From Magallana gigas (Eukaryota), in NCBI RefSeq assembly GCF_963853765.1, contig NC_088856.1, positions 1,054,001 to 1,118,000 on the forward strand: DNA of 64,000 nt, in the 5' to 3' direction. The position numbers were made by a program, and so were the translations under genes. Each line of letters opens with the position of its first letter. Within the stretch, counting starts at the first letter, position 1. The notes beneath the pieces are model-generated. The model was not told the origin of the DNA. It searched no databases and was given only the letters and a program-made list of their open reading frames with translations. This document shows positions 170 through 64,000 of the stretch, piece after piece.

Positions 170-1478
170 TTCCACAAACTGCTGGTCCGTGACCTATCAA
201 CCAAGAAATACCTTCGGTTCCGGATCTGCGACACTAGTGGAGTAAAAGAAGGGGCGACTATTATAAACGAGGACATTGGTTTTATCTTGGACGGACACCT
301 TCCAAATCAATACAAGGTAAGTGAGAGTCTTGTTGTTGTAAAATCTAAACAGAAACTAAAACATTTAGGAATTAAAACTAAAAACATAATAGTGAGTACG
401 AGAACTTAATACTTTGGCTTTCTACGAGACAAAATATATCATATTCAAAATGAGAACGAAATCTGTTATATACAAAAAGTAATCTAAATTATTACACAGT
501 AGGCGAAAAGAAAAACTGGGTTCTCTACATAAAACATCCGAAAAGCATCATTTAATTATGACAAGGTATCTGTTACTGAAAAACTGGAAATCTCATCACA
601 CTGTAAAGAAGAAGTTAGCTTTCTCATGGCAATCTCACGTGTCATGATATTTTATTTTAAATGAAGACCATATGGATATGTGAAAGCACGTCTTTTATAA
701 TTTTTAGTATTGGGTCCTATGCTTTTAAGTATACGAGAAAATTAACTAATTGTGTTTATAAAACTTATCTCATTCATCATGCAAAAGTATCATTTCTAAA
801 TACATATAAAGTGATCTTTAAAACTGGAACCTTTGTAGTTTGAACTCGATTCGGGAGCGTCAACAAAAACTCCTGGCTTTGTCAAGGAACCAACTGTGAA
901 GGAAAAAATACACGTGGTCGTTTTCATCATTGACGGAAGTAACGTGAGCTTTCTGTCAAAAGACGTCGTAAAAAAGCTTAAAGAAATCAAAAGTCTTGTT
1001 ATTGAAAGAGGTATGAATTGACTCGAAATTTATAACTAAGTTATATAAAAAGAATACAGTTTATAATAATTAAAGATGAACATATATATACCATATTAAT
1101 TTGCATAAATGAGATCTAATTATGTGTTCTATTTCATCTAATGCTCAAAAACTGTAAACTTCTTTTTTAGGGATACCCCATTTAGTTTTCCTTACAAAAA
1201 TCGACGAAATTTGTGAACTGGTCAGTGATGACGTCAGCAAAGTATACAAAAGTAAAACTGTAAGGGATGCTGTCAACAGGGCCGCGGACCTCTTCGCTAT
1301 CCCTAGATCCAATGTACTTCCAGTAAAAAATTATGAGAAGGAACATGAACTTCAGACCAGTATCAACATACTGGCCCTTTTGGCCTTGCGAAAGTCACTG
1401 ATGTTTGCAGACGACTTTCTGGAGAATCAGTGTGAGCTGAAACAAGAAAATATGGAGGCTTTAAATAAACAAGACTGA
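170..1478 (+). CDS. IFI44L: IFI44-like gene copy C0, 3' part only (coding exons 4-6)
   Basis: Exons 170-316 (147 nt, FHKLLVRD...ICDTSG...HLPNQYK), 839-1010 (172 nt, FELDSGASTKTPGFVKEP...), 1171-1478 (308 nt, GIPHLVFLTKID...PVKNYEKE...ALNKQD*). All AG/GT sites and phases match the full copies downstream. The 5' exons lie upstream of the window. Confidence 0.9.
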
Positions 1479-2100
1479 TCCCCTCGTAATTTTTCTGATT
1501 TTCTGAGAAAACGATTAAACCACATTTTTGTGACTTTTTCGGATTTGTATTTTGTGTAATTGAAAGATGGTGCAATTAATAAAGGTGAATTAATGCCATA
1601 ATAAACGAGTTAATATAATAATTTGTATGGGGAGGGATTAAGCCCAAACATTGTTTATAATTTAAATACTAGTAAACGTTACATGTCTATTTATTCGGTT
1701 AAAATATTTTAGGCAGGAAAACCTGAAAAACCTACCAGTATAAATAAATCAGCTCTACTATGAGTTAAATATGTAAATGATATAAGCTTCAAACTGTGCT
1801 GTGAGCGAGATAACTGATAAAGACTGTTTTACCTAAATATAGAATGGACAGATTAAGATTTCTTTAACCATTTCCTCAATTGTGTAAAAAAAAAAATGGA
1901 CATTATTAGGTAAACCTGTTGACAAAGATGGTATTGATCCTTACAACAAAACTAATGTTGTGTGGAGTTTACTTAATGAATAGTTACTTTAAGACAAATT
2001 AAGGTAAGATTTGAAGCTGTGTCCCATAAACTTTAATTAATTTATTTACCTATTGAGACACGTGAGTCTTTTGTCTATTCGAGACAGCATTTTTATACTG

Positions 2101-3050
2101 CTACCTTTGGTGTAATATTTCATGAACAACTGAATTTCCAAAACAACGCCGATACTTTATCAAAAGCTGGTGGACGCGCTCTCGGAGGGATGGTTTCCAA
2201 AATTCGTCCATATAAAGAAATAGGAATTTCAACTTTTGAAAAATTGTTTTTAAAATTGTGTAGCGCCAGTTTGGATTATTGTAGTGAAGTGTGGGGCCTC
2301 CAGAATTATCATTCTATCGAAATGGAACAGAATCGAGCCCTCCGTTTTTACTTAGGCGTTCACAAATTAACACCTTTACCAGCGCTACACCGGGGATTTG
2401 GATTGGAACTCTGTTATGATAGACACTGTATTTACGCCGTGCGATTATGGATTCGATTGCTGACAATGGATGACAATCGGCTAACAAAGCGTGTTTTGTT
2501 GTGGGACTTTAATCAACCTGGTTTATGTAGATTGACATTACGCATTAAATCACTGTTCGAATCCACGAATCTTTTACATATTTATGATAATTTATCAGTC
2601 TGTGATGTTAATGAATTTGAAAACAAACTGTTTCTTACTTATGAAAATGAATCGTTGGGAAAGATAAACCAATTACCAAAATTGCAATTGTATAAAAGCA
2701 TTAAAACAAATTTTAAAACTGAAAAGTACCTTGAAATGAACATTTCAAAATCTCAAAGATCTATTTTGGCACAATTCAGGTGTGGGATACTCCAAATAAG
2801 AACTGAAAACGGGGCGATATAAGGGGGAACCTCTCGATGAAAGAATATGTAATTTTTGTGTATCAAATGAAATAAAAGACGAGAATCATTTTCTGTTTAA
2901 TTGTGAAATGTATTCTGATTTTAGAAGGGAATTATTCAATAATGTAGGATATAATCCAACACTAGTAATGTCAAATTAAGACTGTATCTTTTCTCTACTG
3001 TCAAATGTTCCGAGACAAACCTCTAAATATTTACTTGAATCTTGCTTTAA
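2101..3050 (+). mobile_element. Non-LTR retrotransposon (LINE, CR1/L2-like) ORF2 C-terminal fragment, degenerate
   Basis: ORF 2190-2822 plus flanks read (Y)LGVIFHEQLNF...ALGG...LDYCSEVWG...QNRALRFYLGV...RLW.RLL.MDDNRLTKRV...KLQLYKSIK..F.TEKYL...QRSILAQFRCG...*GEPLDERICNFC...DENHFLFNC. This is the typical post-RT region with a Cys/His motif. It is absent from the paralogous spacers at ~25.4 kb and ~59.4 kb. Ends approximate. Confidence 0.8.
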
Positions 3051-3199
3051 TGTGTATTAATATGGAAGATAACTAAAAGGATTTAAAAGTAACAGAAAAG
3101 GGTTAAACTACAAAAAACTGTTATAACTCTACATGTTATCACATAACTCGCAAAATGTATTCCTTTATGATTGAAATGTTATACCGTACTTGAATTTCA

Positions 3200-5008: not shown

Positions 5009-6996
5009 ATGGCGGAGCTACTTGCACGTAAAGACAAGAAACAAATATCACAGTGGATTGGCAGGGACAGTCAGTTTGAGCTCCTATACAAAATAAGCCG
5101 TGACGGGATGTCTTATCAGAGGTTCCATGAGTTATGTGACAACAAAGGACCCACTGTGACAATCTTTTACAACACAGACAACAACGTGTACGGAGGGTAC
5201 CTGTCAGACAACTGGGGGAGTACTCGGAGCTGGTGTACAGACCAGAAAGCGTTCTTGTTCAAATTACATTCTGCTGGTAACTGGAAACCAGTGATGTTTC
5301 CTTATACAAGTGGAGAAACTCATTATAAAGCAGGCAATCACGGGCCATGGTTTCATTCGTTGGCTTCATGCTCAAATAATGTTTTGAAAAAAACAGTGGG
5401 CGGTTTCTATCAACTTTTTTCTGAATATGATTTCTTTGACGGCCAAAGCTTTGATATGAAAGGAGAGACCGCCCAGTCCGTGGCAAACGGTCACAATAAC
5501 GTCACCGATCTGGAGGTCTACCTGGTCAAAGGTAATCGTTATTACTAGATAGTCAAAGGTCAGTTTATATTCATGTAAGTAAATTCATGGACGTCATCAT
5601 CATGAAAACGTTAGAAAAAGTGTATCAGGTTTGTAAATGAAGATAATTTGTCAATTCACATGCATTAATTCGTATTGCAATGACTTCAATAGTTGAGGTA
5701 GCATGTAAATATACGTCTCATTTGCTAAAGTAGTTGTTGGGTTCTGTTATCAGTATCTCAGAGCAAAAATATATGTGTAAATTTACTGCAGAAATGAAAT
5801 GTGTGTACAATATACACGAGAGCTTGTAATAAATTGCCACTGTTGTTGATGGATTGCCAGATGATGAACTTGAATCTCCATGGAGGGACTCACAAGACTG
5901 GAGTTCACAGGTATGTCATTGAAAAAACACACCTAACATTCACTAGTAACACTTCATTAACTTTTACTCGAACATTTCAAATAAAACTTACAACAACCAC
6001 TCATTTCCAGTTAATAAGATCATTGTCTGCGTTATTTCGCCGTTTAAACTTCAGATTAATTGTTGCAGTACTGTTCTGTAATTAATTATCTTAAACTACA
6101 TATTTTCACAACATATAACAAGATATAGTACTATTATATTGCAATCTCGATGGCGCTTTGCATATCAAAAATAAAGAAATATCAGTAGGTTATAATCTGA
6201 TTATTTTAATTATCCGAAGAAATACAACTGACATATATTTTGTTTCTTGTGTACATGTACAATTTTTCAGACTTTTCAAGAATTAAAAGAATTTGTTGCA
6301 AATTACGATCCCCTCGAGGAGATGAAGATTCCTGAGGTCAACATCCTACTGATAGGACAGGTCGGAGCCGGAAAGTCTAGCTTCCTCAACACCATCAACT
6401 CAATCTTCAGGGGCGGTATATCCTCCCGCGCATGCACAGGAAGTGCCGAGAATAGCCTCACTAAACGTGTGAGTCGAAGATTCTGATACAATTAAAATAA
6501 ACTTTATGTCAAAGATTCAATGCTTAAAGATATTTTGAATGTTCAAATCTTCAAATCAACTCTTTATCAGTTTGAAAAATTCCGTGTTCGTGACCCTTCG
6601 ACCAAGAAATACCTCTGTTTTCGGATTTGTGACACAAGGGGGGTTGAGGAGGGACTGTCCATCAAAAGTGAAGACCTGGGCTTTATTCTGGACGGAAATC
6701 TCCCAAATCATTACACGGTATTGTTGTGTAATTTCTCAGCTGATAAATAATCAATGTGTCTTTATATGGATAGTTTTTTTTATAAAGATGATACATGTAA
6801 TAGCAAAAGGTTGATAAAGAAAGCCCAAATGGTACAGTCAAGCCACAATCATTCACAACTTTGACATCAGCTACATGTAGCTTGACAGTGAAAAATGGGC
6901 ATTGAAAATTTTTCAAATAAAACGAATCACTTTTTGCACAGATACGGAGGTTTGACAGATTCTATTATTACTTATTAGGTTAGTTACTGACTCACT

Positions 6997-7033
<37 letters not shown>

Positions 7034-8682
7034 GAGGCGAAGCCGAGCCTTCTATGAGATTGATCAACTCAATATATTTCGGTAGTGAGTCAGTAACTAA
7101 CCTAATAAGTGTTTTGTTTTCTCGAGGACTATCAAGCGACATATATATTCACAAATAGCGATGTTCTACGCAAAGCCATGTACAAGATGCCTTACATCCC
7201 GTCCAATTTAACTCATTTTAAACCTTCAAAATTTTCAATCTCACCTTTCAAATACTCTTTCAAAATCTTTGCTTCACCCATGTTTACTTACAATGTTTTG
7301 TTGCTATTCAAGTTTAAATGTTTTCTCCCTTTCCTCTGCAGAGATTTGAGCAAATTTCGACGCTGCCATTTTGTTCTGCTCCAGACAAAACAATGTGACG
7401 TCAATATTCTAAGGGCAACTACTCTAATTTTAAAGAATTTCAAAGGTCAACTACTCCAAATACTTTAAGAACTTACGGCATGCAGTTTATGTATAAAATA
7501 CTATGAAATGTCGAAATGAGTAAGCGAAGCGTCGACCAATGACGGCCATATTGCCTAATATTATTTCTCACAGAACAAATATAGAGATATATGAGGCAAT
7601 CACGTGCTATGTTTAAACCAATGAAAATGTCACATTTCAGTTCAAGGGAAAACAAAAGATGATTGTAATCTTTCATATCTCTAATGCTGCTGTACATGAT
7701 AAACAACAAAACATAATGTACCTTTTAAGTAAAATACAGTTCCACAATACAAGTAACAGAGGTGAATCAATCTGCTTTCAGTTTAACCCTGTAGAGAAAG
7801 CATCAACAAAAACTCCAGGCTTTGTCAAAGAGCCCACGGTAAAGGACAGGATACACGTGGTAGTGTTTGTACTTGATGGAAGTACCCTGGATGTTCTTTC
7901 TGAGGGGGTCGTCTCAAAACTCAAGGATATCAAAAGTCTGGTAGTGGATAGGGGTAAGTTACTTCTCTCTGTGGGGTTCGTTACAAAACTCATGGAGATT
8001 AAAAGTTTCGTGGTAGATAGGGGTAAGTAACTTCTGTCTGGGTTGTGGGGGGGGGGCATAACAGAACTCAAGGATATCAAAAGTCTCGTGGTAGATATAG
8101 AAAATAACTTTTCTCTGAGAGCCTTAACGAAAAGATATTGTTAAAAGACTTAAAACGAAATACAAAAATCAATTTTTGTGTTAAATGTCTCTTGGTGGAC
8201 AGGTATGGTTTTGTAAGTGTGATTTACTTCAGTCTCCTGGTGATTTGAGGTGAGTAACGTCTGTCAAAAATTAAGAAGGGGTTAGTCAATACCAAAAATG
8301 TTTGTGACACAGGAGAAACTTCAAAGATTGAAGTTTGTACAAGTGTAAACTTCTGCCTTCTTTTTTGTTTCTAGGTGTATCCCAGTTGGCTTTTCTAACA
8401 AAGATGGACAAGATTTGTGAAACAGTAAACAAAGACGTCAGCAAAATGTTCACGAGCAGTGTCGTAGAAGATACCGTCAATAAAGCTGCTGATATTATCG
8501 CTATCCCAAGATCACATGTACTTCCGGTCAAAAATTATGAGAAGGAATCTCAACTGAAGACGGATATAAACATCCTTGCCCTGACAGCTCTACGACAGGC
8601 GCTCATGTTTGCAGACGACTTTCTGGAAAACCAGTATGAACTGGAACAAGAAAACTCGCAGACGTTAAACACGCGGGACTGA
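5009..8682 (+). CDS. IFI44L: IFI44-like protein copy A1 (TLDc + P-loop GTPase-like), intact, ~465 aa
   Basis: Exons 5009-5531, 5861-5910, 6271-6468, 6571-6717, 7782-7953, 8375-8682 (1398 nt, open). TLDc motifs LLYKISRDG/FHELCDNKGPTVT/YGGY/AFLF/DLEVY; Walker A GQVGAGKSS; DTRG; TKMD. Confidence 0.92.
6964..7655. mobile_element. Intronic insertion with a 141-nt terminal hairpin (6970-7110)
   Basis: Absent in the paralog A2 (gacagattctat|aagatgattgtaatc at ~28665). About 60-bp near-perfect inverted arms around ggcgaggcgaagccgagcc. Confidence 0.7.
7886..8120 (+). repeat. ~69-nt tandem repeat made of the end of exon 5 plus its splice donor (about 3 units), copy A1
   Basis: Unit ...ggggtcgtctcaaaactcaaggatatcaaaagtctggtagtggataggggtaagt recurs, with donors after 7953 and 8022. 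Also seen in A2, A3 and, more decayed, in B1 and B2. Confidence 0.85.
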
Positions 8683-12631: not shown

Positions 12632-14072
12632 ATGGAAAGATCACTAACACGTCGAGACAAGAAACAAATATCACAATGGATTGGCAATGATAGTCAGTTT
12701 GAGCTTCTGTACAAAATTAGCCGAGATGGGGGTTCAGCAGAGACGTTCCATGAGTTGTGTGACAACAAGGGACCTACTGTGACCATGTTCTACAACACGG
12801 ACAACAATGTGTACGGGGGGTACCTGTCAGACAGCTGGGAGAGTACCGGAAACTGGTGTACAGACCAGAGAGCGTTTCTGTTCAAATTATATTCTGCTGG
12901 CAACTGGAAACCTGTTAAGTTCCCATACGTAATAAAAGAAACCCATTTTAAAAATAAAACTCACGGACCATGGTTTTATTCGTTGACTTCAATGTATTCG
13001 TTTATAAAAACGACTAATAAACCATCGTCAAACTATTACAATTTAGACACTTCGAGTCTTTTTGACGGACACAGATTTGACATGAAAGGAGAAACCGTCC
13101 AGTCTGTGGCAAACGGTCACAACAATGTCACGGATCTGGAGGTCTACCAGGTCAAAGGTAAGAAATTTTCCCCACATACAATCATCGTTGTGCTTGAAAG
13201 CAATCATCTCACCTTTATTCTGAATTTTTTCTCATTAGGACTTTTTTCAGAAACAAAGATTTTTTTGTCTTTTTTCGAACCAAACCAAAGTTCAAATTAA
13301 TAACTTACATGTAATCATAATGTATCCCAATTAGTACTTATTTCTGTTTTGTTTTTGTTGTCATTTGATAAGTGTTGCGGGACGCGTGCAACAAAATGCT
13401 CATATTCTATTCTAGAAGGTTCTTTAGACGAAGAACTAGACTCTTTTTGGAGGGATTCACCAGAATGGAGTCCACAGGTTTGTGTCATTACAAAAAACAC
13501 TGACAATGATGCAATCTATATATTTATTATCTTTACACCAGAATAGTAACTGAATATGCACTGCCAAAATGACAAAACAATATCCTAACTATTTGATTGA
13601 AATCAAAAGTGCAATTGAGCAACAAAAATACAACAGTTTTCCAGAAAAAGAAAAAGTAAGCTATATGATAAAACATATTACTTAGAGCAACGATTTCTAT
13701 CTTAAATACAATTGTTATTATCAAGCATAAACATAAAAGTCACACTAAAGAATATTTCAACGTACAATATATAACCATATCAAATAGGTATGCTTGTATT
13801 TTGCGCCTATATCAGTCAGCATGTCAGCTAATACATATCACTGTTGTTTTGATTTATCTTCAATCATTCAGACTTTTCCAGAATTAAAAGAATTTGTTGC
13901 AAACTACAAACCTTTTGAGGAAACAAAAATCACAGAGGTCAACATTCTACTCATTGGTCCGGCTGGTGCAGGAAAATCTAGCTTTTTAAATACCATTAAC
14001 ACAATTTTTAAGGGCGAAATGTCATCCCGTACATGCACTGGATGCGCAGATATTAGTCCAGCACAAAAGGTT

Positions 14073-14142
<70 letters not shown>

Positions 14143-17976: not shown

Positions 17977-18030
17977 ATGAACGCATTACTCGTGCACAAA
18001 CAGAAGAACAAAAAATCAATGGGTCGGTGG
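17977..18030 (+). pseudogene. 5' stub of a C-type IFI44-like gene (MNALLVHKQKNKKS...)
   Basis: Matches the start of C1 (MNGFLVHKHKNKIS), and ~0.8 kb of upstream sequence resembles the C1 and C2 upstream regions. Similarity stops after ~15 codons. Confidence 0.7.
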
Positions 18031-19991: not shown

Positions 19992-20129
19992 NNNNNNNNN
20001 NNNNNNNNNNNNNNNNNNNNNNNNNNNNNNNNNNNNNNNNNNNNNNNNNNNNNNNNNNNNNNNNNNNNNNNNNNNNNNNNNNNNNNNNNNNNNNNNNNNN
20101 NNNNNNNNNNNNNNNNNNNNNNNNNNNNN
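19992..20129. other. Assembly gap (138 N)
   Basis: Run of N. Confidence 1.
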
Positions 20130-22331: not shown

Positions 22332-22367
<36 letters not shown>

Positions 22368-37000: not shown

Positions 37001-37279
37001 AATCAAGATTAATTTTATCCAATCAAGTTGCATCATTTTAATCTAAGGCATAACAATAGTTCTTGAGCAGTTGAAAGGGGAGTGTTCTGTTGATTACTTA
37101 CATTGATTCTGTAGTCTGTGACCCTCCCCCACACCCCTCACTGATTGTGGGTGGATCCTCCAGCAGTGACCGGGCAGTATTGATGGCGTGGATAAAGATC
37201 TCACCCCCATGACTGGCCAGCATGTGGGAGATCACCTTGGTACCTGACTTCCGGGGCTGCTCCAACATAACAGCTCGAC
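34048..37279 (-). pseudogene. INTS13: Integrator complex subunit 13 (Asunder) 3' half, 7 exons, frameshifted first exon
   Basis: Exons 37279-37102, 36665-36581, 36352-36276, 35694-35537, 35113-34907, 34752-34640, 34199-34048. Translation: GRAVMLEQPRKSGTKVISHMLASHGGEIFIH...LEDPPTISEGCGG.VTDYRI|DFKEFMKENRL...RFWPLVIGETIIFNM...GKGPKRDEQYKQMWAELENLIRAH...HQRVLECLL...LLSLWTDRI...AELYQ...*. This matches my recollection of the INTS13 C-terminal half. There is a 1-nt deletion at ~37122, and the inferred acceptor reads TG rather than AG. Confidence 0.85.
34465..34630. repeat. ~20-bp minisatellite (tagacaccctctatatacatg-like) in an INTS13 intron
   Basis: Repeated ctagacaccc..tagatacat units. Confidence 0.75.
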
Positions 37280-52039: not shown

Positions 52040-53205
52040 CAAATCAAATCGAGACGGAGGGTAAAACAAATTAAAATGTTTCTTGAGTTGGGTACCTGTC
52101 ACAAAGCTTGGAAACAGTGGGGTCTGGTTAACAAACAAATCGGATGAAATTCGGTGGCAGTTGTACGGATCATAGGACATTTCTCGTTGAATTGTAAACT
52201 CCTGGTCATTGGAAACCAATCCCTACATACTGTAGATGGAGAAACACATTCCAAAATCTTTATTAAGAGCCTTGGTTTTTTTCCTTGCAATTGGGGTCAT
52301 TTAACATATCCTTTCAAATGATTGAAAATTCTCGATCAAACTTTTACAAATTCAGTATAAATGAGCTCCTTGAGGGACAAACATTTGACATGAGAGGGTA
52401 GACCGCCCAATCCGTAGAAAACAGTCACAACAACGTTACTAACCCGGAGGTCTACCGAGTCATAGGTTAGAGTTTATTCATTATTATCATATTAACTTTT
52501 TCTCGTTTAAAACAAATGCCAACGATTTTGCAATACTCACCAGAATAGGAAAGTTACTGTTGTTGTAATTTTACTTTTTAAGAAGACAGGTTGATCAGCA
52601 ACATACCTTAAAATTAGATAACTAAATCTCTTCAGTTTGACATCGAGTCCGGGGCGTCAATAAAAAGCCCGGGCTTTGTTAAGAAACAAACAATGAGGGA
52701 TAAAATACACGTGGTCGTTTTCTTTCTTAACAAGGGTAGTCTGAACTTTCTGTCAAACCACGTTGTTAAAACACTTCAAGAGATCAAAAGTCTTACTGTA
52801 CGTTGATAGAGGTTTGAAATTGGAAAAGTCATTAAATACAAAATGTTCTCGTTTCTTTGGTGAATTAACCTAGACGTGCATTAGTATATTCATTAACGAA
52901 GTTTTAGATTTAGATTCCTTACCAAGAATGACGAAATTAATGAATTGGTCAGAGATGACGTCAGCAAAGTGTACATTAGTAAAACTGTAGAAGATGCTGT
53001 CAACAAGGCCGCGGGTCTCTTCGCTATCCAAAGATTCCATGTACTTCCGGTCAAAAATTATGAGAAGGAATCTGAACTCCTGACCAGTATCAACATTTTA
53101 GCTCTAATGACGTTGCGGAAGTCGTTGATGTTTGCAGACGACTTTCTTGAGAACCAGTATGAGCTTAAACAATAAAAGATGGAGACATTAAATAAACAGG
53201 ACTGA
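52040..53205 (+). pseudogene. IFI44L: IFI44-like copy C2, decayed, exons 2-4 deleted
   Basis: Scrambled TLDc exon ending at 52465 (...ttgacatgagagggtagaccgcccaatcc...gaggtctaccgagtcatag|gt). Exon 5 at 52636-52811 has a 4-nt insertion. Exon 6 lacks its acceptor and has a premature TAA at 53173; the original TGA is at 53203-05. Confidence 0.88.
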
Positions 53206-54298
53206 GGCCCCCAAACGTATTAGGATTCTCTGGGGGAAACTATTAAAACTTGTTTTGTGGCTTTTTGGGTTAACTTCGTGTAACTTAAAGATGACGTAAA
53301 ATAACGATGAATTAGTGCTACAAAAAATGAGCTTATTATGTAATTATTTGTTTGGGGAAGGAGTTAAACGCAGCAATTGATGTACATTAAAACTATATTT
53401 GATGTTATTTGTATGCTTGTAAATGTTGTTAACATGTTCATTAATTCGGGCACCTGTATTTATGACAGGAAAACCTAAAAATCTACCGGTATAAATCTGC
53501 CCTGCTACATGTTACATGTAAAGGACATAAGCCTCAAATTATTTATACTGTGAGCGAAAGAACAGGGTAGACTGTTTTACTAACCGATCTAAAATGACAT
53601 ATTAAGACTTATTATTCTCTCTAAGCATTTAAGGTGGGTCGCGGGTTTACCCCATAAAAAATCTCACGAGAAAACATACCCTGAAAATTTGTCAAATCGT
53701 TCTGTAGGATTTACAGTTCATTACAAAAAATATTTATCAAATTTGTCTACGCTGTTTTTATGCAATACCGCTTTGAACTTGGTATTGTTGATGGTGCTGT
53801 TTTGACGCTTTTTTAATGAATACAAAGGAAAATGAGAATTTTTAAGATGGAGTTGTTTTGAGAAATTGCAAGTAACTCTTAAACAGTTTAGACAAATTTG
53901 TCAACTGTTTCTGTGCGTAAAGAAAAAGTGATTTAAAAAAATTTATGTAAAAAAAAATAATATGTGTTCTCGCTAGATTTTTTCTATTTTATCTTTACTG
54001 AAAATTGCCGTATTTTCGTATTTGACATCGTGAGTACGACATCATTTATTTTTCACCCGTTCCACTAATTTAGTGATAACATCACTTAAAAATCAAATTT
54101 AGACTTCTTAAGTTTAAACTAGAAGCTTACATTTTTTAAAAAGCAATTTTGGAGAGTATAAAAATAACGCGGAGATAAAAAAAAAGAAAAAAAAAAGCAT
54201 ATTTTTATTATGAATTCGAAGTTATAGGGCCTCCAGTGTACCCCCGGTTAGCATTGGCCTTTGAAAAACAATAGTTCTTAATTTTACTTTTGTATTAT

Positions 54299-56975
54299 TG
54301 TCACAATTATGTTCCAACCATACTCCCATACTTTTGGTTGAGTTCTAGTATCTAAATTTTGTTTGAAATGTATTTCCATACTTTTGAGTTATTTATATAT
54401 TTTTGCTTGCATGAGTGGTCACTGGGTGTAGTAATACTACTGGAGAAAACCTGTTTAACAGGTATTATTTATTTTTAAATAAACTTGCTTAGTGGTTTGA
54501 AGAGTGAGCTTAGATGTATTCTGGGCGACAAGCTGTGTGGACGTGTCTGTACTCTTGGTGAGATATCTTGGGCGTTTCCCATGCTGTGTGATCTTGGGAA
54601 CGGCATCCCTGTGTGGGCTTATTTGTGTGAGAGAGATACAACCCAGTAAGTGTTACATTATTTCTATTGTCATGGTTGATATTAATTCTGCATTGTGAGT
54701 AGAGTTAGACTACAGGTATGTGAAATTGTAATTTAAATAGCTGTTATGTTACGGTAGCCCAGAATTGTAATATACTGCAGCGGTGTGTTTAATGAGTCAG
54801 TATATGTATCTAATTTCAAATATGTGTATAAGAAAACTTATTATGCCACGTTGTTCGATATTTAAATAGGTGACCACGGAGTGGGCACGTGCACGTGGTG
54901 GACCATGTTATATCCGTGGAAGGGCTTATGGTGGGACAATTAATATCCAAACCAAAAACGTATGCTTTCCCAGTCCTACGGAACTTACCTTATGTGAGAC
55001 GTCTTGTCGAATGCCATCTAGTCCATCCGATAGAACTGATGTCAACAACCTCCTAATTATTGTATATTTATAAATAAATTGTGTTTGTTTTGTAAATTTT
55101 GTTTTGTTTGACTTACAAGGACCATCCTTTTACCAGATTGGTGAAATGTGTTAAGAACCTAGTCTACAATTTGAATGCAATTGTGACATTTTGATGGCAG
55201 CGGTGGGATGGTCTTTGTTTAGTCATTTTTTTGTGGTACTATTTGTGTGAACTACTCGCATATTTTTCCATTGTGATATATGTTAGTACCTGTGCTTACT
55301 TTAGAATTTTTTTTCTAATGTAGCAATTTGTTTGTAGAAAAACTCAAACATTTTTACATTGTATGTGTACAAATTTTCGCACGTTGAGCGGTTTGTTGCT
55401 CATTTTTTTTCTTTTTGAACATGAAATTCATTGAGTTGGGTACTAGATTAGGATTGAAAGATGAAGATCTGAGAGAATTTGAAAAAAATAAAGAGACAAA
55501 GAAATTTGAAAGAGATGAGAGAGCGGCAGATAGAGAAATTCGTAAGATAGAAAAAGAGATTGAGCTAGAAACGATAAAGAGAGAAACAGAGTTACAGAGA
55601 CAGAAAAACTCAGAGATAGCTGCTGCAAGTGCTTCTGTATCAAGTCAGGCTAAACTTCCCAAACTACCAGTTTTTTAAGAAACTAATGACTGTATTGACT
55701 CCTATTTACAGAGATTCGAGAGATTTGCATTCAACGCAAAATGGGAAGAGTCCATCTGGGCCATCAATCTCAGATCATTGTTAAAAGGTAAAACTCTGGA
55801 CGTTTATTCTAGATTACCTGCAGGTGAAGCTCTCAATTACAGATGTCTGAAGCAGGCGCTACTAATGCGATTCCAACTGACAGAGGAAGGATTTCACTCA
55901 AAGTTCCGTAATTCTAAACCAGAAAAAGAGGTCATCAAAGGATCAGAGAACATTGGAGCAGATTTCCTGAGCCGACATGTTGCAGAATAGATTAGTTTTA
56001 AGTGCATGAACTGTTTAACTTACGGCACATTTCATTTACGATAAAATGTTACAAAATTGTATTTTGTTCTTAGGAATGGAGGTATTGTCACAATTATGTT
56101 CCAACCATACTCCCATACTTTTGGTTGAGTTCTAGTATCTAAATTTTGTTTGAAATGTATTTCCATACTTTTGAGTTATTTATATATTTTTGCTTGCATG
56201 AGTGGTCACTGGGTGTAGTAATACTCCTGGAGAAAACCTGTTTAACAGGTATTATTTATTTTTAAATAAACTTGCTTAGTGGTTTGAAGAGTGAGCTTAG
56301 ATGTATTCTGGGCGACAAGCTGTGTGGACGTGTCTGTACTCTTGGTGAGATATTTTGGGCGTTTCCCATGCTGTGTGATCTTGGGAACGGCATCCCTGTG
56401 TGGGCTTATTTGTGTGAGAGAGATACAACCCAGTAAGTGTTACATTATTTCTATTGTCATGGTTGATATTAATTCTGCATTGTGAGTAGAGTTAGACTAC
56501 AGGTATGTGAAATTGTAATTTAAATAGCTGTTATGTTACGGTAGCCCATAATTGTAATATACTGCAGCGGTGTGTTTAATGAGTCAGTATATGTATCTAA
56601 TTTCAAATATGTGTATAAGAAAACTTATTATGCCATGTTGTTCGATATTTAAATAGGTGACCACGGAGTGGGCACGTGCACGTGGTGGACCATGTTATAT
56701 CCGTGGAAGGACTTATGGTGGGACAATTAATATCCAAACCAAAAACGTATGCTTTCCCAGTCCTACGGAACTTACCTTATGTGAGACGTCTTGTCGAATG
56801 CCATCTAGTCCATCCGATAGAACTGATATCAACAACCTCCTAATTATTGTATATTTATAAATAAATTGTGTTTGTTTTGTAAATTTTGTTTTGTTTGACT
56901 TACAAGGACCATCCTTTTACCAGATTGGTGAAATGTGTTAAGAACCTAGTATACAATTTGAATGCAATTGTGACA
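54299..56975 (+). mobile_element. Internally deleted Gypsy (Gmr1-like) LTR retrotransposon
   Basis: LTRs 54299-55188 and 56086-56975 (890 bp, TG...CA, about 7 mismatches by eye); TSD ATTAT; PBS tgatggcagcggtgggat (55192-55209, complementary to tRNA-Leu 3' end); PPT aggaatggagg. Gag fragment (AKLPKLPVF*..DSYLQRFERFA..KFRNSKPE) is joined to the RNase H end IKGSENIGADFLSR*. Confidence 0.92.
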
Positions 56976-57565
56976 ATTATAAAGACACTTTTTTAATTAA
57001 CCAGATTTGTATAGTTGCTATTAAGAATATCAAATCAAAAAGCCCACTTTTGCCCTCTCATTCTAAATCAGAGAATGCAGAGCATAGTATTTTTTATATC
57101 AAAAATTTAGAGTAAAGGGTGGTACCAAATTTTTAAGTAGGTTCCCAATTATCACATTCTCTTTGTTAAATGTAATGTTAAATGTTAATGTAAATATTTG
57201 CGAATAGTCTCAAATCTAAAAAAAAACGGATGATATTTGTAAGATATTGACTTTTATTTTGGTTATCAAAATCTTCACAACTAATTTAGATTCCCCGGCT
57301 TTGCTCCTCCCTTTTATCTGTCAAAATAGTTACGATATACTTACTATAAATGCTTGTCAGTTTTTTTCTTTTGAAGAATATGTTTTACGGTGCTACCGTT
57401 CTGGCGAGCGCAGCAAGAATTATACACATACCTTGCATCATTGTCAACTTTTTAATTAGGTATCAACGAACGTCAAAGAATTTTTGAGAGAGTATATTGC
57501 TCTACAATAAGTATACCAAAGGTACTAATTTTAATGGTTATGATACATACAGCGCAATCTCCTTC

Positions 57566-57568
<3 letters not shown>

Positions 57569-57611
<43 letters not shown>
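57569..57611. repeat. (GA)n microsatellite inside the Kolobok-like element
   Basis: Direct sequence. Confidence 0.95.
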
Positions 57612-57614
<3 letters not shown>

Positions 57615-59549
57615 GGTACCTGTTTGTAGGTGTGTAATTTCCCACTTTTAAATTTAATGGTCTGACTATATGCCATATATACATAATTTTTTTAACTGTT
57701 TATTTTTTTTATTTTATTCCTTTTTATTTATTTCAAAATGTCCTATTGTTTATTTCCTCCCTACTCATTCATGCACAATTAGCTAAAAAATGGATCAATG
57801 TGACAGTAAAGTATGACTCTTGCTTACATATAAATTATACATAAAATCTCTAAATTAAAAAAAATAAAAACAAATCATACGTCAATGAGGCAGGTATCGC
57901 AGTCTATACTGAAATAGCTAGTACACGCATTACAGATGTTTGATCCACCTCTAAATTTATCGCGGGAAATATAGCGCAAGTGCACTGTGACGTCATCCAT
58001 GACTTTGTTCGTCTTTGCTTACGTTTCTCGACTCATTACGGAGGTATGGAAGCATGTAACAAATCTTGTGAGTCTCGCCAAAGCATATGCGGTACTCAAA
58101 ACGTGTCTTAAAACCTCGAGACACCGTAAATTACGAGTTAAAAGTCGGCCATTTATGGCATAGCACCACGGGTGAAAACATTAGAGAGCATTATGGGACG
58201 TAGACAAAACATTTTGTTTGATGAACTGTAGGTTTAGCTCGTTCTTTTTCCCGCGCACACTGGTTCTTAGAGCTCGCTTCGCTCGCTATTACCGACCCAA
58301 ACTATTTTACAAACAAATCTCTCTCTCTCTCTCTCTCAAGTTTGAGACTATATGCCTGTCATTACTTAGCTTTTATGGACGATTGCACAGAGAGTTTTAA
58401 AAAAGTAACGCTCCAATTCTTGCTAATAATCTACGTAGTTATGATGCATTGCTTCCAATCTGCATTTCCAACTTACGATTCTTACATGAAAACTAAGACT
58501 GGTATGAATTACTACTTTATTATTTACACTATAGACCTAAATCGAAGTTCGTTATTATAACTAAGAGCATTTGACGTTTGAAAATATGAAGCGGGAAACC
58601 TTGAGATGTCTCCTTTATGACGTCATAAACAAATGTGCACAAAACAGCCAGTCGAGTTGTCTAAATTGAGTACAGAATTTGATGACGAGAGCAAACCCGC
58701 GACCCACCTTAATCAACTGTGTAAAAAAAAAAAGGACAATATCAAGTAAACCATCATGGTATTTAGCAACCTATAATGATACACAGTCCACTGACCACTG
58801 ATAGAGAACGGTGTATTATCATTAGAGGTTGCTACAATGGTCCTTACAACAAAACTAGTGTTGTGTGGAGTTTACTGTATTGTTGAATGAATGAATGTTT
58901 ATTTCTCTCAAACTATATCAATGGTACATGATGTTCAAAAATTTTTTTACAAATGTTCAAATGCTGGGTCAAGTTAGAAAGAGTACAGTGTTAAATAAAT
59001 CGAGCTAATATTTTCTTAACAAATATGGACAATTTTTTAAATGAATCAATGTCATTAGTATTCGTAAAATTCCCAAATTTATAAGTATTAACATTTGTTA
59101 AATATTTTTCTTCAGTTTGTTGTGGAATAAAGAAAATGCTTGGCATTTCATAACATAGTGGTATTCGTCACCCAAAGTGTTTTTATTACATAATGAACAA
59201 TTTCTATGACATCTTTCTATGTTATTCCATCTTCCAGTTTCAATAGGTTAAATTTTGTAAATATCAATCTTTAATCATTTGGAAGTTTCATAAGATAAAT
59301 TTACAATCCAAAGCTTTTCTTAAAGATTGTTCCCTCGATGATTTATTATCCTGAGCCAAGCTAAGGTTGGTATCGAATTTAATTAACTACTGAGGAAAGT
59401 GAAAATATCTTTTGTCTGTTCGAGACAGCATTGTTAGATCACTACCTGTGTGATATATGGATTTTATTTTCACAAATATTTTTACCTACCTGTAGTCGTC
59501 ATATAAGTTTTTAGGATTGCCTGGCACAAAAAAAAACTTTTACAATCTA

Positions 59550-59757
59550 CTGTGGTTTCATTAATGTTCCAGGGTATCAATTTTCGTGGATAAAGTGAAA
59601 ATCACAGTTTCAAGGATACGTAAATTCATGGCCAATGACCCTTTTAATACAAAATAGAAATAGAAATTGCGTTTCAATGAACATTTAATTTCATGGATCA
59701 ACTTAACAACGAAATCCACTAAAAATTGGTATTCAACGAATATTGATGAAACCACAG
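59550..59757. mobile_element. 208-bp Tc1/mariner-like MITE, TA TSD
   Basis: ta|ctgtggtttcattaat ... attgatgaaaccacag|ta; absent at ~25530. Confidence 0.75.
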
Positions 59758-60094
59758 TATTTGTTACAATGGTCAGTTTACCGTCTTCATTGTGTATTAA
59801 GTTGAAAGATAGTTTAAAGGATTTAAAAGTAACAGAGGGGGTTAACTATACGTGAACTATAACGCACAACCCGCAAAATGTATTCTTTTGTGGTTGATAT
59901 GTTACACCGTACTTGAATAATCAAAAAAAGAAACGAAAGTAGCAGAATTGCACGGTTTGTATAGTTTTATTGTTACTTTGAACAATGTAGTTTCTTAACG
60001 TTAGACTTTATACCCAAGGAGCTCACATAGTAAATATGAACTAACAAATGTACGGTTTTGGCAAACAACAGTTGCAAACTAACTTATTTCGATA

Positions 60095-60415
60095 TATTTA
60101 CATTATCCAGTGTATTTGCCTGTGATAACAATGCGTATCGATTTTGTACTATATAACTCATAATACAAATGCAGGCAAATTGAGCCGCCAGCGGGGTTTG
60201 TTTATTTATATTTAAATATTTAATCGTACTATGGCCTAATATTATATAAATATAAGTAATAAGGAATCATTCTTTGAATATTATGAGGTGATAATTTCGG
60301 TCGGGGCGTGTTCAAATCTATCATAAAGCCCTTCGGGCTTTATTGGATTTGATCACGCCCCGACCAAAATTATCACCTCATAATACTCAAAGAATGATTC
60401 CTTATTCCTTATATA
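60095..60415. mobile_element. Insertion ending in a ~165-nt hairpin (60250-60414)
   Basis: About 80-bp inverted arms around aaagccc-ttcg-gggcttt; absent from the A2 spacer (~25865). Confidence 0.7.
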
Positions 60416-60621
60416 AGCAAGATTATTCGTGTTCTTCTTTCTATTCCCCTTGCAAGTTACCCGTTTATTAGCACATATCACCTAAACCTGTATTTTGATA
60501 TCATAAATGATTAAGGTGCATGTCTAGATCTGCATGAATTATCAAAATAACGTCATCAATTTTTAGTATTTTGAATATTAATTTATTAAGTACATGTCTT
60601 GCATCTTAGATATTATCATTA

Positions 60622-62636
60622 CATCCAAAGTCAGTTAAAGTGCCCCAAACATTTCCGAAAAATGGCTCAGTACAGATATCGCAGGGAATGTATAAATTTG
60701 GATAGAGCAACATCTGAATGACCATGAGAAACACACATAAGAGCTATGGAAAATAAGATGTTATATTTTTCGGACATATTTAACAAATCCAGTGTAATTT
60801 TAGTTCTAAAGTGAATTACGTACCTTCATGTAATACTATACAAAATGTAAAATAATTTTTTATTGTAGCATTCAAAAATAATGTTTCAAGTAATAATGCT
60901 TGATGCAGATAGAGTAACTATCCAATTAAAAACCATAGTTCAATGGAAAATTGACTATCAATTCTAAAATAGTCCATTTACCACATAGTATCTGTAAGGT
61001 AAAAAGAAAAAAAAATGTTGTGTTATTAAAAAACCTATTTTATTTATTCTTTTTTTTAGACTTGCATTCTAAATTCAACAAAGAATTATGCATCTGCTTT
61101 CATTTGTATACCTTTTAATAAGAGGTTCTTAAGTTTTTATGTTGAAACTCAGAGGAAATATTTGTTTTGATACATAGTGAAATGGTCTTCTTTGTAACGT
61201 GATTCGCGTCAATGCCTTAAATTGCAAATCTATATGTTTTATTCATGATTAAACAGCAGTTATTTCACAAATGAAAGTATGGGAAATAAAAAAAGATATG
61301 TGGCAATACTTATGCAAATGATAACATATATCTCTAAAGTGTTATGATTGTTTCAAATCAGATTATGTCACATTTTACATATCTTGTTAAATATTAGGGG
61401 AATTCAAAAGCTGTATGTTCTTAAATAACATAATAACTACTTACTACAGATAATAAAAGCAATGTTTTCTTGTGTCCATATAAATTTGATGGGAATGGGC
61501 AATACATTATATTTCAAAATAAACCTGTAGAATAAAACAAGCAACGTATCGTAGTTCACAAACGAGGTTGTAAGAGTCAATATGGAAATAAACATAATAT
61601 TAAGAAGTAAATACAGTTATCTTATTGAAGGGATTTTAACAGTTTATCACACAAACTTTGAACTTTTCTTCATATATTTCAGAAAATTTAAACATATTTC
61701 TAGTCTCTTCCTGCTTTACTGGCTCGTTCAAAGAGACAGAATATCAATATTTCTCTGTACTAGGAATCCAAGTCTTGTCTGTCTGTTCGGGCCATCTAAA
61801 GGACTTTACCCCACATATCATTAATGTGAAATGATATCCCTGGTCGTATCCGATAATTTTTTCAACACACAGTGTACTATAAACCTTTGTACATGGTGAC
61901 AATATGCGCGCATATGCTTGATACTTGCGTTCACCTAATCACCAACAATATAAATGCTCCAGTGCTTGCTTTCTGTAAAACTGTTGGTAGGGGTGTCACT
62001 CTCACTGCCTTGACAAGGATCAGAGCTCATACAACAAGTTACCCACTTCTTGCAAGCCTTATGGTACCAAATTGACGTTTTTGAAACATGCGTCCCAGAG
62101 ACATGATCTGAACGGCTATTACAAATCACCCCCCCCCCCGGCGTGAAAAACAGCATAATAACCTCTTCTTTCCGATAGTTTTCTCTAACCTTTGATCTTT
62201 TTGGTTCCCATCAGTATTTCTTTTAAAGCTTTGCATATTTCATTCTAGTCATTATATGAAATTAAAAGAGTAGTTATGTATGTTCGTGAATTACGTTACA
62301 CTGCTGTAAATTACGTTACACTCAAATACAGACTTAATACCGATTTAAACACCCATCGAATCAATATTTATATTTCATATTTATGATAAATTATTTTTTG
62401 AACCTAAATATGACCACTCTCGTTTGTGACATCCGGTTTTGATCAAATTTGGCTTCTAAATTTTTCATTTTAATACATTAAATGGGATTAATACATCGTA
62501 ATATTTTAATTCATAAGTCAGTCATAGCTAGATATTATATTTAATCCCCTCAACAACTAAAGATGGAGAATTTGGTTTTCAAAAATCGCTTGTAACAACA
62601 AAAATTGTTTTGGGGCACTTTCACTGACTTTGGATG
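60622..62636. mobile_element. 2.0-kb non-autonomous TIR element, superfamily unassigned
   Basis: TIR catccaaagtcagt(t/g)aaagtgccccaaa at both ends; empty site gatattattaataacgtac at ~26053; TSD unclear; no long ORF. Confidence 0.75.
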
Positions 62637-63178
62637 AATAACGTACTTGTAGGCTGGCCTAACATATTCCTCACTCTTTTATCCTGCTGATAATACTTTA
62701 AAAATCAATTTAAACATTTTATGTCGCATCAATGCACGTCGATTGGGTTTTCTTGCAAGATATGCATGTAAACATAAGGCTCACTATAAGATTCACTATT
62801 ACCATACCTTTACATAAACATTACAAAAGAATGTGAGTTTTTATCTTTAAACTTGAATTCGGACTCAAGTATCCTTAAAATTATACCATTGGTAATATCA
62901 GTCACACTGTGGTATTAAATTCGAATTAATTACAACTAACAAATTATAGTCCCCACCACTTAGCAATGAATGAAATGATCACATTGCAAAATAACACATG
63001 TATCTCTAATATAACTTAGCGATTAACAAGTATACTCATAGAATAAATACTAGAAAATGATGCATTCAACTCGTTTCATAAAATATAGAAAACTTCAACA
63101 TTTTTTTCAAAACTGTTACAAGACTACATTCATAAGTTAATTCCTTTGTTTGTGCATTTGTTTTAAAGTTTATAAAGC

Positions 63179-63701
63179 ATGGCGGAGCTACTTACACGTA
63201 AAGACAAGAAACAAATATCACAATGGATTGGCAGGGACAGTCAGTTTGAGCTCCTATACAAAGTAAGCCGTGACGGGTTGTCTTACCAGAGGTTCCACGA
63301 GTTGTGTGACAACAAGGGGCCCACTGTGACCATCTTTTACAACAAGGATAACAACGTGTACGGGGGGTACCTGTCAGACAGCTGGGGTAGTACTGAGGGC
63401 TGGTGTACAGACCAGAAAGCATTTCTATTCAAACTACATTCTGCTGGCAACTGGAAACCAGTGATGTTTCCTCATACAAGTGGACAAACTCATTTTAAAC
63501 AAAACGATCACGGACCATGGTTTCATTCGTTGCCTTCATTTTACTCAGGTTCTATTATGAATAAATCAGCAGACGGCTATTACGTGTTATATACTTCTTC
63601 CTTTTTTGACGGGCAAAATTTTGACAGGAAAGGAGAGACCGTCGATTCAGTGGCAAACAGTCACAATAACGTCAGAGATCTGGAGGTCTTCCTGGTCAAA
63701 G
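63179..63701 (+). CDS. IFI44L: IFI44-like copy A4, TLDc exon (gene continues beyond the window)
   Basis: 523-nt open exon from ATG to GTCAAAG|gtacat, same size as the other A-type first coding exons. Confidence 0.85.
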
Positions 63702-64000
63702 GTACATGTAATTAATATTGCTTTACTCAGCCATCATTTTTAATAGTACATGTATTTGATTATCAAAATGAACAAGAGACTCAAGAGTCTTCACGATCAG
63801 ATCAAAACAGAAGGTCAAATGTCGGAGTTCATTCATTGGCGTCGTCATCTTTAAAACGTTAGAAAAATTGATCAGATTTGATTACAAGATAAACATAATA
63901 CATTCAGTCATCACGCATGCATTTCATTTACTTATAACATCAAGGAATTGAAACCGTTAAAAACTAGTTGAAATAACGTATAATAATTAAGTATTTTGTA

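What the first reader, a model, noticed from the sequence alone, without database searches (positions are those of the whole stretch)
170..64000. IFI44-like array built from a repeated three-gene cassette (A-B-C)
Nine copies plus a stub sort into three types by protein sequence, first-exon length (A 523 nt; B and C 526 nt), introns and flanks. The order C0-A1-B1-C1-A2..A3-B2-C2-A4 means the duplicating unit is a ~22-25 kb trio, not a single gene. Each C is followed by the same C-to-A spacer. Five complete copies are open and two are recent pseudogenes, which fits birth-and-death evolution of an antiviral-type gene family. Whether the trio is a functional module (hetero-oligomer or co-regulated set) is inference.
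Basis: partly seen in the sequence, partly recalled or inferred. Interest (0 to 1): 0.7.

Follow-up and report, generated by a model that had tools for sequence, protein, structure and literature searches.

The report
Oyster IFI44-like array, multi-gene duplication
This is the far end of a large cluster of antiviral-type IFI44-like genes in the Pacific oyster; it grew by copying a block of several genes at once, including a piece of the neighbouring housekeeping gene. That is an ordinary way for immune gene families to expand.

Summary
The window (Magallana gigas, C4:1,054,001-1,118,000) carries nine IFI44-like genes, all on the + strand, in the order C0-A1-B1-C1-A2-A3-B2-C2-A4, plus a C-type stub. 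They sort into three types in the trees. First exons are 523 nt (A) and 526 nt (B, C1). Each C is followed by the same C-to-A spacer. A1, A2, B1, B2 and C1 are open; A3 and C2 are broken.

The second cassette was not made by copying a trio. One collinear chain links 5000-37481 to 38112-78855. This is a ~33-kb tandem duplication of A-B-C-A plus 8 kb of distal flank. That flank holds the 3' half of INTS13, the single-copy gene next to the array. The fragment sits after A2, and the homology ends inside an INTS13 intron.

The A copies are mosaics, which points to gene conversion. A3 lost the normal upstream spacer. The C2-type pseudogene has the same layout in C. angulata, so it is old.

The assembly gap (19992-20129) lies between genes. 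Its flanks are 63 bp apart in contiguous C. angulata sequence.

This is ordinary birth-and-death evolution. There is no evidence that the trio is a functional module.

The parts
170..1478 (+). C0, exons 4-6 of a divergent C-type IFI44-like gene. Its first three exons lie 97-1386 bp before the window. The gene is complete and open (467 aa).
   Evidence: 98.5% identical to transcript-derived protein P0170
1479..5008 (+). C-to-A spacer, copy s0. The conserved core is at 3045-3412, and the segment proximal to A1 is at 4289-5008. It is interrupted by a retroelement-like ORF at 2190-2822.
5009..8682 (+). A1, open, 465 aa, six coding exons
   Evidence: RefSeq XP_034306889.2 belongs to the same 90% cluster
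12632..16472 (+). B1, open, 459 aa in my model. Its stop comes 21 nt earlier than in B2.
17879..18040 (+). Stub: a C-type promoter-proximal region plus about 55 nt of exon 1. It is the copy-1 remnant of the C-pseudogene lineage. High-copy repeat sequence follows at 18040-19400.
   Evidence: (depth in the thousands)
19992..20129 (.). Assembly gap (138 N). It is intergenic, 457 bp upstream of the C1 ATG.
20586..23716 (+). C1, open. It is transcribed and spliced. Exon 2 starts at 21581 (62 nt), giving 470 aa.
   Evidence: joints 21111|21581, 22600|23065, 23236|23409; P0169
23717..26700 (+). C-to-A spacer, copy s1
26701..29699 (+). A2, open, 465 aa, identical to RefSeq XP_034306896.2
29700..37481 (.). 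Copied distal flank ('tail'). It is homologous to the 12 kb after A4 (65942-78855 in extended window coordinates).
34072..37280 (-). Partial copy of INTS13/Asunder (Pfam Mat89Bb profile positions 356-689 only), carried in with the duplicated block
37482..38120 (+). Duplication junction. The sequence is unique in the genome. It holds a weak (66-69%) relic of the spacer core at 37586-37715. Its last 283 bp are shared with the C. angulata A3 counterpart.
38121..44237 (+). A3 pseudogene. It has TAA TAA in exon 1, a lost acceptor of exon 3, P-loop GAEKS, and a 166-bp satellite (41777-43268) in its last intron.
47423..51061 (+). B2, open, 470 aa in RefSeq (XP_065936897.1)
52090..53207 (+). C2 pseudogene. 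It has an exon-1 remnant, lacks exons 2-4, has a 4-bp insertion in exon 5 and a TAA in exon 6.
53208..63178 (+). C-to-A spacer, copy s2. It is enlarged by insertions, including 896-bp direct repeats at 54296-55191 and 56083-56978 (99.1% identical).
63179..64000 (+). A4, the last gene of the array. It runs to 66434 beyond the window, is open, and is 469 aa in RefSeq (XP_065936898.1).

Best explanation
The window is the distal end of a roughly 0.9-Mb, same-strand supercluster of IFI44-like genes (an N-terminal TLDc domain plus a P-loop GTPase) on a Magallana gigas chromosome.

Three paralogue lineages (A, B, C) arose within the Magallana lineage. They stay distinct (dS about 1 between types) and are under purifying selection.

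The local array grew by tandem segmental duplication of multi-gene blocks, not of single genes.
- The event that made the second cassette copied about 33 kb.
- The block ran from just upstream of an A gene, through B, the C region and a second A, into an intron of the flanking single-copy gene INTS13.
- This gives [A1-B1-C(stub)/C1-A2-INTS13 fragment][A3-B2-C2-A4-INTS13].
- The junction is non-homologous and unique in the genome.
- A3 landed without the normal C-to-A spacer, which is the presumed promoter region, and decayed.

Later gene conversion or recombination between A copies, deletions in the C region and transposon insertions produced today's mosaic.

The duplication predates the split from the C. 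angulata haplotype that I compared. That species has the same building blocks in other numbers.

Shown here: gene structures, types, collinearity, the INTS13 fragment, the mosaic pattern, C1 splicing, and fold similarity to human IFI44.

Inferred: the mechanism of the duplication, promoter loss as the cause of A3's decay, and an antiviral role.
For: Family.
- Pfam TLDc hits for the first-exon translations of A2, B1 and C1 (E 9e-15 to 2e-16), with weak P-loop hits.
- G1, G3 and G4 GTPase motifs are present in the models.
- An AF2 model (pLDDT 90) matches human IFI44 and IFI44L over the whole length, E 2e-38.
- RefSeq names the proteins 'interferon-induced protein 44(-like)'.

Supercluster: 39 TLDc-exon matches genome-wide, 35 of them on C4 between 0.2 and 1.12 Mb and all on the + strand. 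A4 is the last of the run.

The 33-kb unit.
- A 29-block collinear chain links 5000-37481 to 38112-78855, with 17 kb aligned at 75-96% identity.
- Mat89Bb profile positions 356-689 occur at 34072-37280 on the minus strand. The only full gene lies at 69166-116948.
- The chain ends between the INTS13 exons for profile positions 356-415 and 323-356.
- The junction is unique in the genome.
- No A or B gene lies upstream of C0.

Types: CDS and protein trees. dN/dS is 0.1-0.3; dS within a type is 0.23-0.44 and between types 0.9-1.2.

Mosaic pattern.
- In the upstream spacer, A2 and A4 are 96% identical while A1 and A2 are 88%.
- In the 3' half of exon 1 and intron 1, A1 and A2 are 93-96% identical while comparisons across pairs are 59-67%.

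Age.
- The proximal tail after A4 is 98.6% identical to C. angulata, but only about 90% identical to the copy after A2.
- C. angulata has an A3 counterpart upstream of a B gene.
- C. angulata has three C pseudogenes with the C2 layout.

Expression: spliced C1 RNA contigs, and full-length transcript-sized contigs for a C0-like protein.
Against: - Divergence between the two copies is uneven. Mismatch-only identity is 75-90% in the genes and 91-96% in the spacer and tail. A single clean event does not explain everything.
- The A copies do not pair as A1/A3 and A2/A4, as a simple block duplication predicts. The CDS tree gives (A3,(A4,(A1,A2))). At least one conversion event has to be added.
- C2's duplication partner appears to be the stub, not C1. 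The tree of C 3' ends is unresolved.
- The left half of copy 1 is joined to the rest across an assembly gap that no read contig bridges.
- I could not fetch C. angulata 807-818 kb to see whether the INTS13 fragment sits there too.
- An antiviral function was not tested for these particular copies.
Confidence: 0.8

Rival explanations
1. The trio really is the unit. The array expanded by repeated unequal crossing-over with an A-B-C period (A1B1C1 | A2.. | A3B2C2 | A4). The B-C pair after A2 was then lost and replaced by flank sequence.
For: - The cyclic order A-B-C-A recurs, with ATG-to-ATG periods of 21.7 and 25.1 kb.
- The same spacer follows all three C copies.
- The block [spacer-A-1.6 kb] is repeated inside each 33-kb unit (3045-10329 ~ 25573-32805).
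- C. angulata shows A3psi-B-Cpsi, then A, then sequence like the A-to-B spacer. Whether a B follows that spacer directly was not fetched. An older trio-period expansion is therefore plausible.
Against: - It needs an extra, independent copy of 8 kb of distal flank with half of INTS13 placed exactly after A2, plus a deletion of B-C. One 33-kb event explains both.
- A3 lacks the normal spacer that a trio-period crossover would give it.
- There is no A0-B0 upstream of C0.
Confidence: 0.12
2. Assembly artefact. The two cassettes, or the parts left and right of the gap, are divergent haplotypes of one locus laid in tandem.
For: - A gap lies inside copy 1 and no short-read contig bridges it.
- Other M. 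gigas assemblies and transcripts carry A and B variants only 82-92% identical to those here. Very divergent haplotypes therefore exist.
Against: - The tail|A3 junction and the series C1-A2-A3-B2-C2-A4-INTS13 lie in one gap-free stretch.
- The copies differ by 4-25%, by different transposon and satellite insertions, and by different gene states.
- C. angulata, an independent assembly, has the same order ...C-A | A3psi | B-Cpsi-A.
- The gap flanks are 63 bp apart in contiguous C. angulata sequence.
- Depth on both sides of the gap is equal and looks single-copy in two runs.
Confidence: 0.05
3. The trio is kept together by selection because the A, B and C proteins work as a set (a hetero-oligomeric GTPase complex or a co-regulated unit).
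For: - The three types are old (dS about 1), are not homogenised with each other, and are under purifying selection.
- They are linked in a fixed order in two species.
Against: - Only one of the two cassettes has A, B and C all intact. The second keeps only B2 plus A4.
- C. angulata has A'-C doublets without a B, and C pseudogenes copied along with their neighbours.
- Linkage and order follow from tandem duplication alone.
- No expression or interaction data were obtained.
Confidence: 0.08

Closest known systems
Vertebrate IFI44 / IFI44L (interferon-induced protein 44)
   Same: - N-terminal TLDc domain plus C-terminal P-loop GTPase domain.
- Similar length (465-470 aa against 444-452 aa).
- Whole-length fold match, E 2e-38, 26% identity.
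- In oysters, IFI44 transcripts rise on OsHV-1 challenge (PMC8917759, read).
   Different: - In my own knowledge, vertebrates have two adjacent genes. This oyster chromosome has 39 or more exon-1 matches, including a Magallana-specific radiation into A, B and C types.
- Induction of these particular copies was not tested.
Tandem segmental duplications in immune gene clusters evolving by birth and death (established knowledge, for example MHC, KIR, NLR and IRG/GIMAP GTPase clusters)
   Same: - Multi-gene duplication blocks.
- Pseudogenes copied along with live genes.
- A truncated copy of a flanking gene at the junction.
- Gene conversion between paralogues.
- Copy-number differences between close taxa.
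   Different: Nothing essential. The particulars are the A-B-C-A block and the INTS13 fragment.
Other expanded oyster immune families (for example IAP/BIRC; PMC8917759)
   Same: Lineage-specific expansion by tandem duplication in Crassostrea/Magallana.
   Different: A different protein family. I found no paper describing the organisation of the IFI44-like cluster. The library covers open-access papers only.

Membership tests
IFI44 / IFI44L family | N-terminal TLDc domain | tested here: met
   PF07534 hits for the exon-1 translations of A2, B1 and C1, E 9e-15 to 2e-16, above the cut-off
IFI44 / IFI44L family | C-terminal P-loop GTPase domain with G1 (GxxxxGKS), G3 (DxxG) and G4 (TKxD) motifs | tested here: met
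   - G(Q/P)xGAGKSS, CDT(R/C/S)G and LTK(M/I)D are present in all open models.
- Weak Pfam P-loop hits on the single exon.
- PF01926 and PF00735 are on record for homologues.
- GTP binding was not assayed.
IFI44 / IFI44L family | Whole-length similarity to vertebrate IFI44 proteins | tested here: met
   Foldseek with the AF2 model of A2 (pLDDT 90): the top five hits are IFI44 or IFI44L of human, chimpanzee and mouse. Residues 1-464 align to 3-440, E 2e-38 to 9e-33.
IFI44 / IFI44L family | Induction by interferon-like or antiviral signalling | not testable with these tools
   Only the literature on oyster 'IFI44' transcripts in general and spliced C1 RNA in one run. The raw RNA run X21 gave almost no reads on the exons.
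Tandem segmental duplication (one multi-gene block) | Collinear paralogous blocks in direct orientation covering the whole unit | tested here: met
   A chain of 29 blocks, 5000-37481 against 38112-78855
Tandem segmental duplication (one multi-gene block) | A single end|start junction, with a truncated copy of the sequence flanking the array | tested here: met
   The INTS13 3' half occurs only after A2, the full gene occurs only after A4, and the chain ends in an INTS13 intron. The junction is unique in the genome.
Tandem segmental duplication (one multi-gene block) | Equal divergence of all parts of the two copies, with paralogues pairing by position | tested here: not met
   Identity ranges from 75 to 96%, and A1 groups with A2 rather than with A3. 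This is explained by later conversion, but that is an added assumption.
Three-gene (A-B-C) cassette as repeat unit | Homology between successive units with the trio period over the whole unit | tested here: not met
   A shift of one trio aligns only spacer-A-1.6 kb (3045-10329 against 25573-32805). B1-C1 have no partner after A2, and there is no A0-B0 before C0.
Birth-and-death evolution with gene conversion | Pseudogenes among live copies, copy-number change between close taxa, and mosaic identity between paralogues | tested here: met
   A3 and C2 are broken. The C. angulata array has different numbers of the same blocks. Sliding-window topology switches along the A genes.

The most novel reading that the evidence does not exclude
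The A, B and C lineages are kept as a linked set because their products act together, for example as a hetero-oligomeric TLDc-GTPase antiviral complex in which the hypervariable TLDc patch differs by type. Block duplication would then be favoured because it copies the whole set.
Probability: 0.08. Interest if true: 0.6.

Novelty: new member of a known kind. Interest (0 to 1): 0.33.

Why it matters
IFI44-like genes are among the transcripts reported to rise after OsHV-1 challenge in oysters.

A precise map helps per-paralogue expression work, copy-number genotyping and resistance mapping. The map shows which copies are live, which are dead, and which block is copied. It also shows that the array differs between M. 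gigas and C. angulata, and probably among individuals.

The INTS13 fragment is a handy marker for the duplication.

In evolutionary terms this is a clean but ordinary case of block duplication, gene conversion and decay in an immune cluster.

Tried and rejected
- Trio x3 model: rejected for this window (see the rival explanations).
- A gene hidden in the assembly gap. This was suggested because C. angulata has an A' gene between its C pseudogene and C. Rejected: the gap flanks lie 63 bp apart in C. angulata.
- Bridging the gap with reads. Contigs from runs X1 and X2 enter it by 13-62 letters from either side, but none spans it.
- The junction as a transposon. Rejected: 37470-38110 is unique in the genome.
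- The spacer core as a transposon. Rejected: it occurs only in the three spacers.
- Showing that the C pseudogenes form one old lineage with a tree of their 3' ends. The tree is unresolved and mosaic. The claim rests on the shared exon layout only.
- Dating by a simple clock. Divergence is too uneven.
- The raw RNA run X21 gave almost no reads on the C1 exons, so no expression level could be read.
- No Pfam hit for ORF 2190-2822.
- Literature: no paper on the organisation of this cluster was found.
- I could not fetch C. angulata 807.4-818.0 kb or 851.5-878.0 kb, because no exact protein was available to look them up with.
Full report
WHAT IS THERE

The window is G000:C4:1,054,001-1,118,000 of a 564-Mb, 29-contig genome. 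RefSeq proteins of Magallana gigas that lie on a contig of the same length (57,946,171 bp) match my gene models, so the organism is the Pacific oyster. GC content is 33%, and there is one run of 138 N at 19992-20129.

All long open frames, and all frames that resemble each other, are on the + strand. Aligning the copies exon by exon gave six coding exons of 523/526, 50, 198, 147, 172 and 308 nt with GT..AG borders.

Gene states:
- A1 (5009-8682), A2 (26701-29699), B1 (12632-16472), B2 (47423-51061) and C1 (20586-23716) are open.
- A3 (38121-44237) has two in-frame TAA codons in exon 1, has lost the acceptor AG of the P-loop exon, and has GAGKS changed to GAEKS.
- C2 (52090-53207) keeps a decayed exon-1 remnant, lacks the next three exons, has a 4-bp insertion in exon 5 and a TAA in exon 6.
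- Reading 30 kb on either side showed that C0 (exon 1 at -1386) and A4 (to 66434) are complete and open.

Checks on the models:
- A2 equals RefSeq XP_034306896.2 exactly. A4, B2 and C1 differ from RefSeq only by a 12-nt-longer second exon.
- RNA contigs of run X15 show GT..AG joints at 21111|21581, 22600|23065 and 23236|23409. C1 is therefore spliced as modelled, with the longer second exon.

FAMILY

- Exon 1 is a TLDc domain (PF07534, E about 1e-16).
- The rest carries G1, G3 and G4 GTPase motifs.
- An AlphaFold model of A2, built on 38 homologues (pLDDT 90), finds human and chimpanzee IFI44, then IFI44L, as best matches over the whole length (E 2e-38, 26% identity).
- Membership of the IFI44 family is supported on architecture and fold. 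Inducibility was not tested. An open-access paper reports IFI44 among transcripts raised by OsHV-1 in C. gigas (PMC8917759).

TYPES

- A CDS tree gives A (78/83), B (100/100) and C0+C1+C2 (97/100). A tree of exon 1 from 29 cluster members and a protein tree with other oysters agree.
- The A+B+C clade (100/100) holds only M. gigas and C. angulata proteins. Saccostrea and Ostrea proteins fall outside it.
- dS is 0.9-1.2 between types and 0.23-0.44 within types. dN/dS is 0.1-0.3.

THE GAP

The gap lies in the B1-to-C1 spacer, 457 bp before the C1 ATG. No exon or reading frame is involved.
- DNA contigs of two runs reach 13-62 letters into it from both sides, but none bridges it.
- Depth is the same on both sides and looks single-copy (11-20).
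- Mapping only the flanks onto contiguous C. angulata sequence puts 19819-19986 and 20130-20351 at 893196-893370 and 893434-893656. They are in the same order and strand, 63 bp apart.
- The flanks are therefore adjacent and the gap is small. I did not fill it.

WHAT WAS DUPLICATED

A self-comparison of the window plus its flanks gives one collinear chain of 29 blocks. It runs from 5000 to 37481 against 38112 to 78855 (17 kb aligned). The chain does not stop after C1. It continues through the C-to-A spacer, A2 and 8 kb downstream of A2, which match A4 and its downstream flank.

That flank encodes part of INTS13 on the minus strand:
- Pfam Mat89Bb (INTS13/Asunder) profile positions 356-689 lie at 34072-37280.
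- The genome has one complete INTS13 gene, at window coordinates 69166-116948, directly after A4.
- The chain ends at 78855, between the INTS13 exons for profile positions 356-415 and 323-356.

So a block was copied in tandem that ran from just upstream of an A gene, through B, the C region and a second A, to mid-INTS13. It is about 33 kb in copy 1 and about 41 kb in copy 2, which has extra insertions.

Other points on the junction and the neighbours:
- The junction (37482-38120) is unique in the genome.
- A3 resembles A1 only from 9 bp, and A2 from 60 bp, before the ATG. Further upstream there is only a 66-69% relic of the spacer core.
- The genes upstream of C0 (at -20314 and -7966) are neither A nor B type. 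There is no third cassette.
- A shift by one trio aligns only spacer-A-1.6 kb (3045-10329 against 25573-32805).

They are not the length of the copied block.

RETICULATION

The block model predicts the pairs A1/A3 and A2/A4. Instead the tree gives (A3,(A4,(A1,A2))). A sliding window over the four A loci shows a mosaic:
- In the upstream spacer, A2 and A4 are 96% identical while A1 and A2 are 88%.
- From the 3' half of exon 1 through intron 1, A1 and A2 are 93-96% identical and A3 and A4 are 70-88%.
- Across the two pairs identity is only 59-67%, with informative sites up to 77:0:0.

Mismatch-only identity between the two copies is 82-90% in the genes (75% in the C exon-1 remnant) and 91-96% in the spacer and tail. 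I read this as gene conversion or recombination after the duplication. That is an inference.

COMPARISON WITH C. ANGULATA (GCA_025612915.2, loci L038-L043)

The order there is B - Cpsi - A' - C - A | A3-like pseudogene | B - Cpsi - A | ... | B - Cpsi - A' - C - A - INTS13.
- The same building blocks occur in other numbers.
- Apart from the last A, the tail and C1 (95-99%), identities to the window copies are 80-95%. The arrays are therefore not one-to-one.
- The proximal tail after A4 is 98.6% identical to C. angulata, but only about 90% identical to the copy after A2. For one INTS13 segment the figures are 95.1% and 92.5%. The duplication therefore predates that split.
- C. angulata's A3 counterpart is also dead but through other lesions: a different TAA, a 1-bp deletion in the P-loop and a TAA in exon 4, with the acceptor intact. 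This fits a copy that was free to decay in both lineages.
- Its three C pseudogenes have the same layout as C2. Their upstream sequence matches the window's stub rather than C1's upstream. The C2-type pseudogene is therefore old and was copied as a pseudogene. Its partner in copy 1 is the stub, which is cut off by a high-copy repeat (depth in the thousands).
- A tree of the C 3' ends did not resolve this.

Other M. gigas assemblies and transcript contigs encode A and B variants only 82-92% identical to those in the window. This suggests that the array is polymorphic.

ARTEFACT?
- The junction and the series C1-A2-A3-B2-C2-A4-INTS13 lie in gap-free sequence.
- The copies differ by insertions, satellites and gene state.
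- An independent assembly of a sister taxon shows the same order around A3.
- I put the chance that haplotypes were laid in tandem at about 5%.

FUNCTION

Nothing supports a functional trio. The second cassette has only B2 intact, plus A4. C. angulata has A'-C pairs without a B. Linkage and order follow from block duplication alone.

VERDICT

The kind of event is ordinary, but it is now well mapped.

Noticed in passing
G000:C4 about 0.2-1.12 Mb (outside the window): There are 39 TLDc-exon matches genome-wide. 35 of them lie on this stretch of C4, all on the + strand, and the window is its distal end. The exon-1 pairs 968k~1011k and 979k~1033k suggest another multi-gene segmental duplication upstream.
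   Followed up: partly
window 34072-37280 (-): The 3' half of INTS13/Asunder (Mat89Bb profile positions 356-689) is embedded in the array. It is a by-product of the block duplication, and the only full gene lies just after A4.
   Followed up: yes
window 41777-43268; extended coordinates 71968-76534: A 166-bp satellite (9 copies) lies in the last intron of A3. A related (about 65%) 4.5-kb array lies in an INTS13 intern region (intron) after A4 and is absent from the copied fragment after A2.
   Followed up: partly
window 54296-55191 and 56083-56978: Two 896-bp direct repeats, 99.1% identical and about 0.9 kb apart, lie inside the C2-to-A4 spacer. They look like a recent LTR-type or TRIM-like insertion.
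   Followed up: no
window 18000-19400 and 21141-21331: High-copy repeats, with contig depth of about 10^3 to 3x10^4 against 11-20 nearby. The first truncates the C stub. The second is a short element in C1 intron 1, also abundant in RNA reads.
   Followed up: partly
window 14070-14130, 22322-22400, 48953-49020, about 60-120: A (CT)n microsatellite starts directly after the donor of the P-loop exon in the B and C type genes (and in gene X upstream), but not in the A type. It is a type-specific intron marker.
   Followed up: no
window 7886-8120, 28900-29050, 40775-40986: In A-type genes the end of exon 5 plus its donor is repeated in tandem (period about 70 nt, 2-3 copies), giving possible alternative donors.
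   Followed up: no
window 5330-5450 and the same place in the other copies: The 3' part of the TLDc exon and intron 1 are by far the most divergent part of the A genes. A1/A2 against A3/A4 are 59-67% identical there. This coincides with the 'hypervariable patch' of note s1-382380.
   Followed up: partly
L040 793582-797400 and L039 888017-891914 (C. angulata record coordinates): These are A' genes: exons 1-5 are A-type, but the last exon is closest to B (77-79% aa). They are annotated as 469-aa proteins, and no counterpart exists in the window.
   Followed up: partly
window 2190-2822 (+): A 210-aa ORF in the C0-to-A1 spacer looks like a retroelement tail. It has no Pfam hit at E 0.01.
   Followed up: partly
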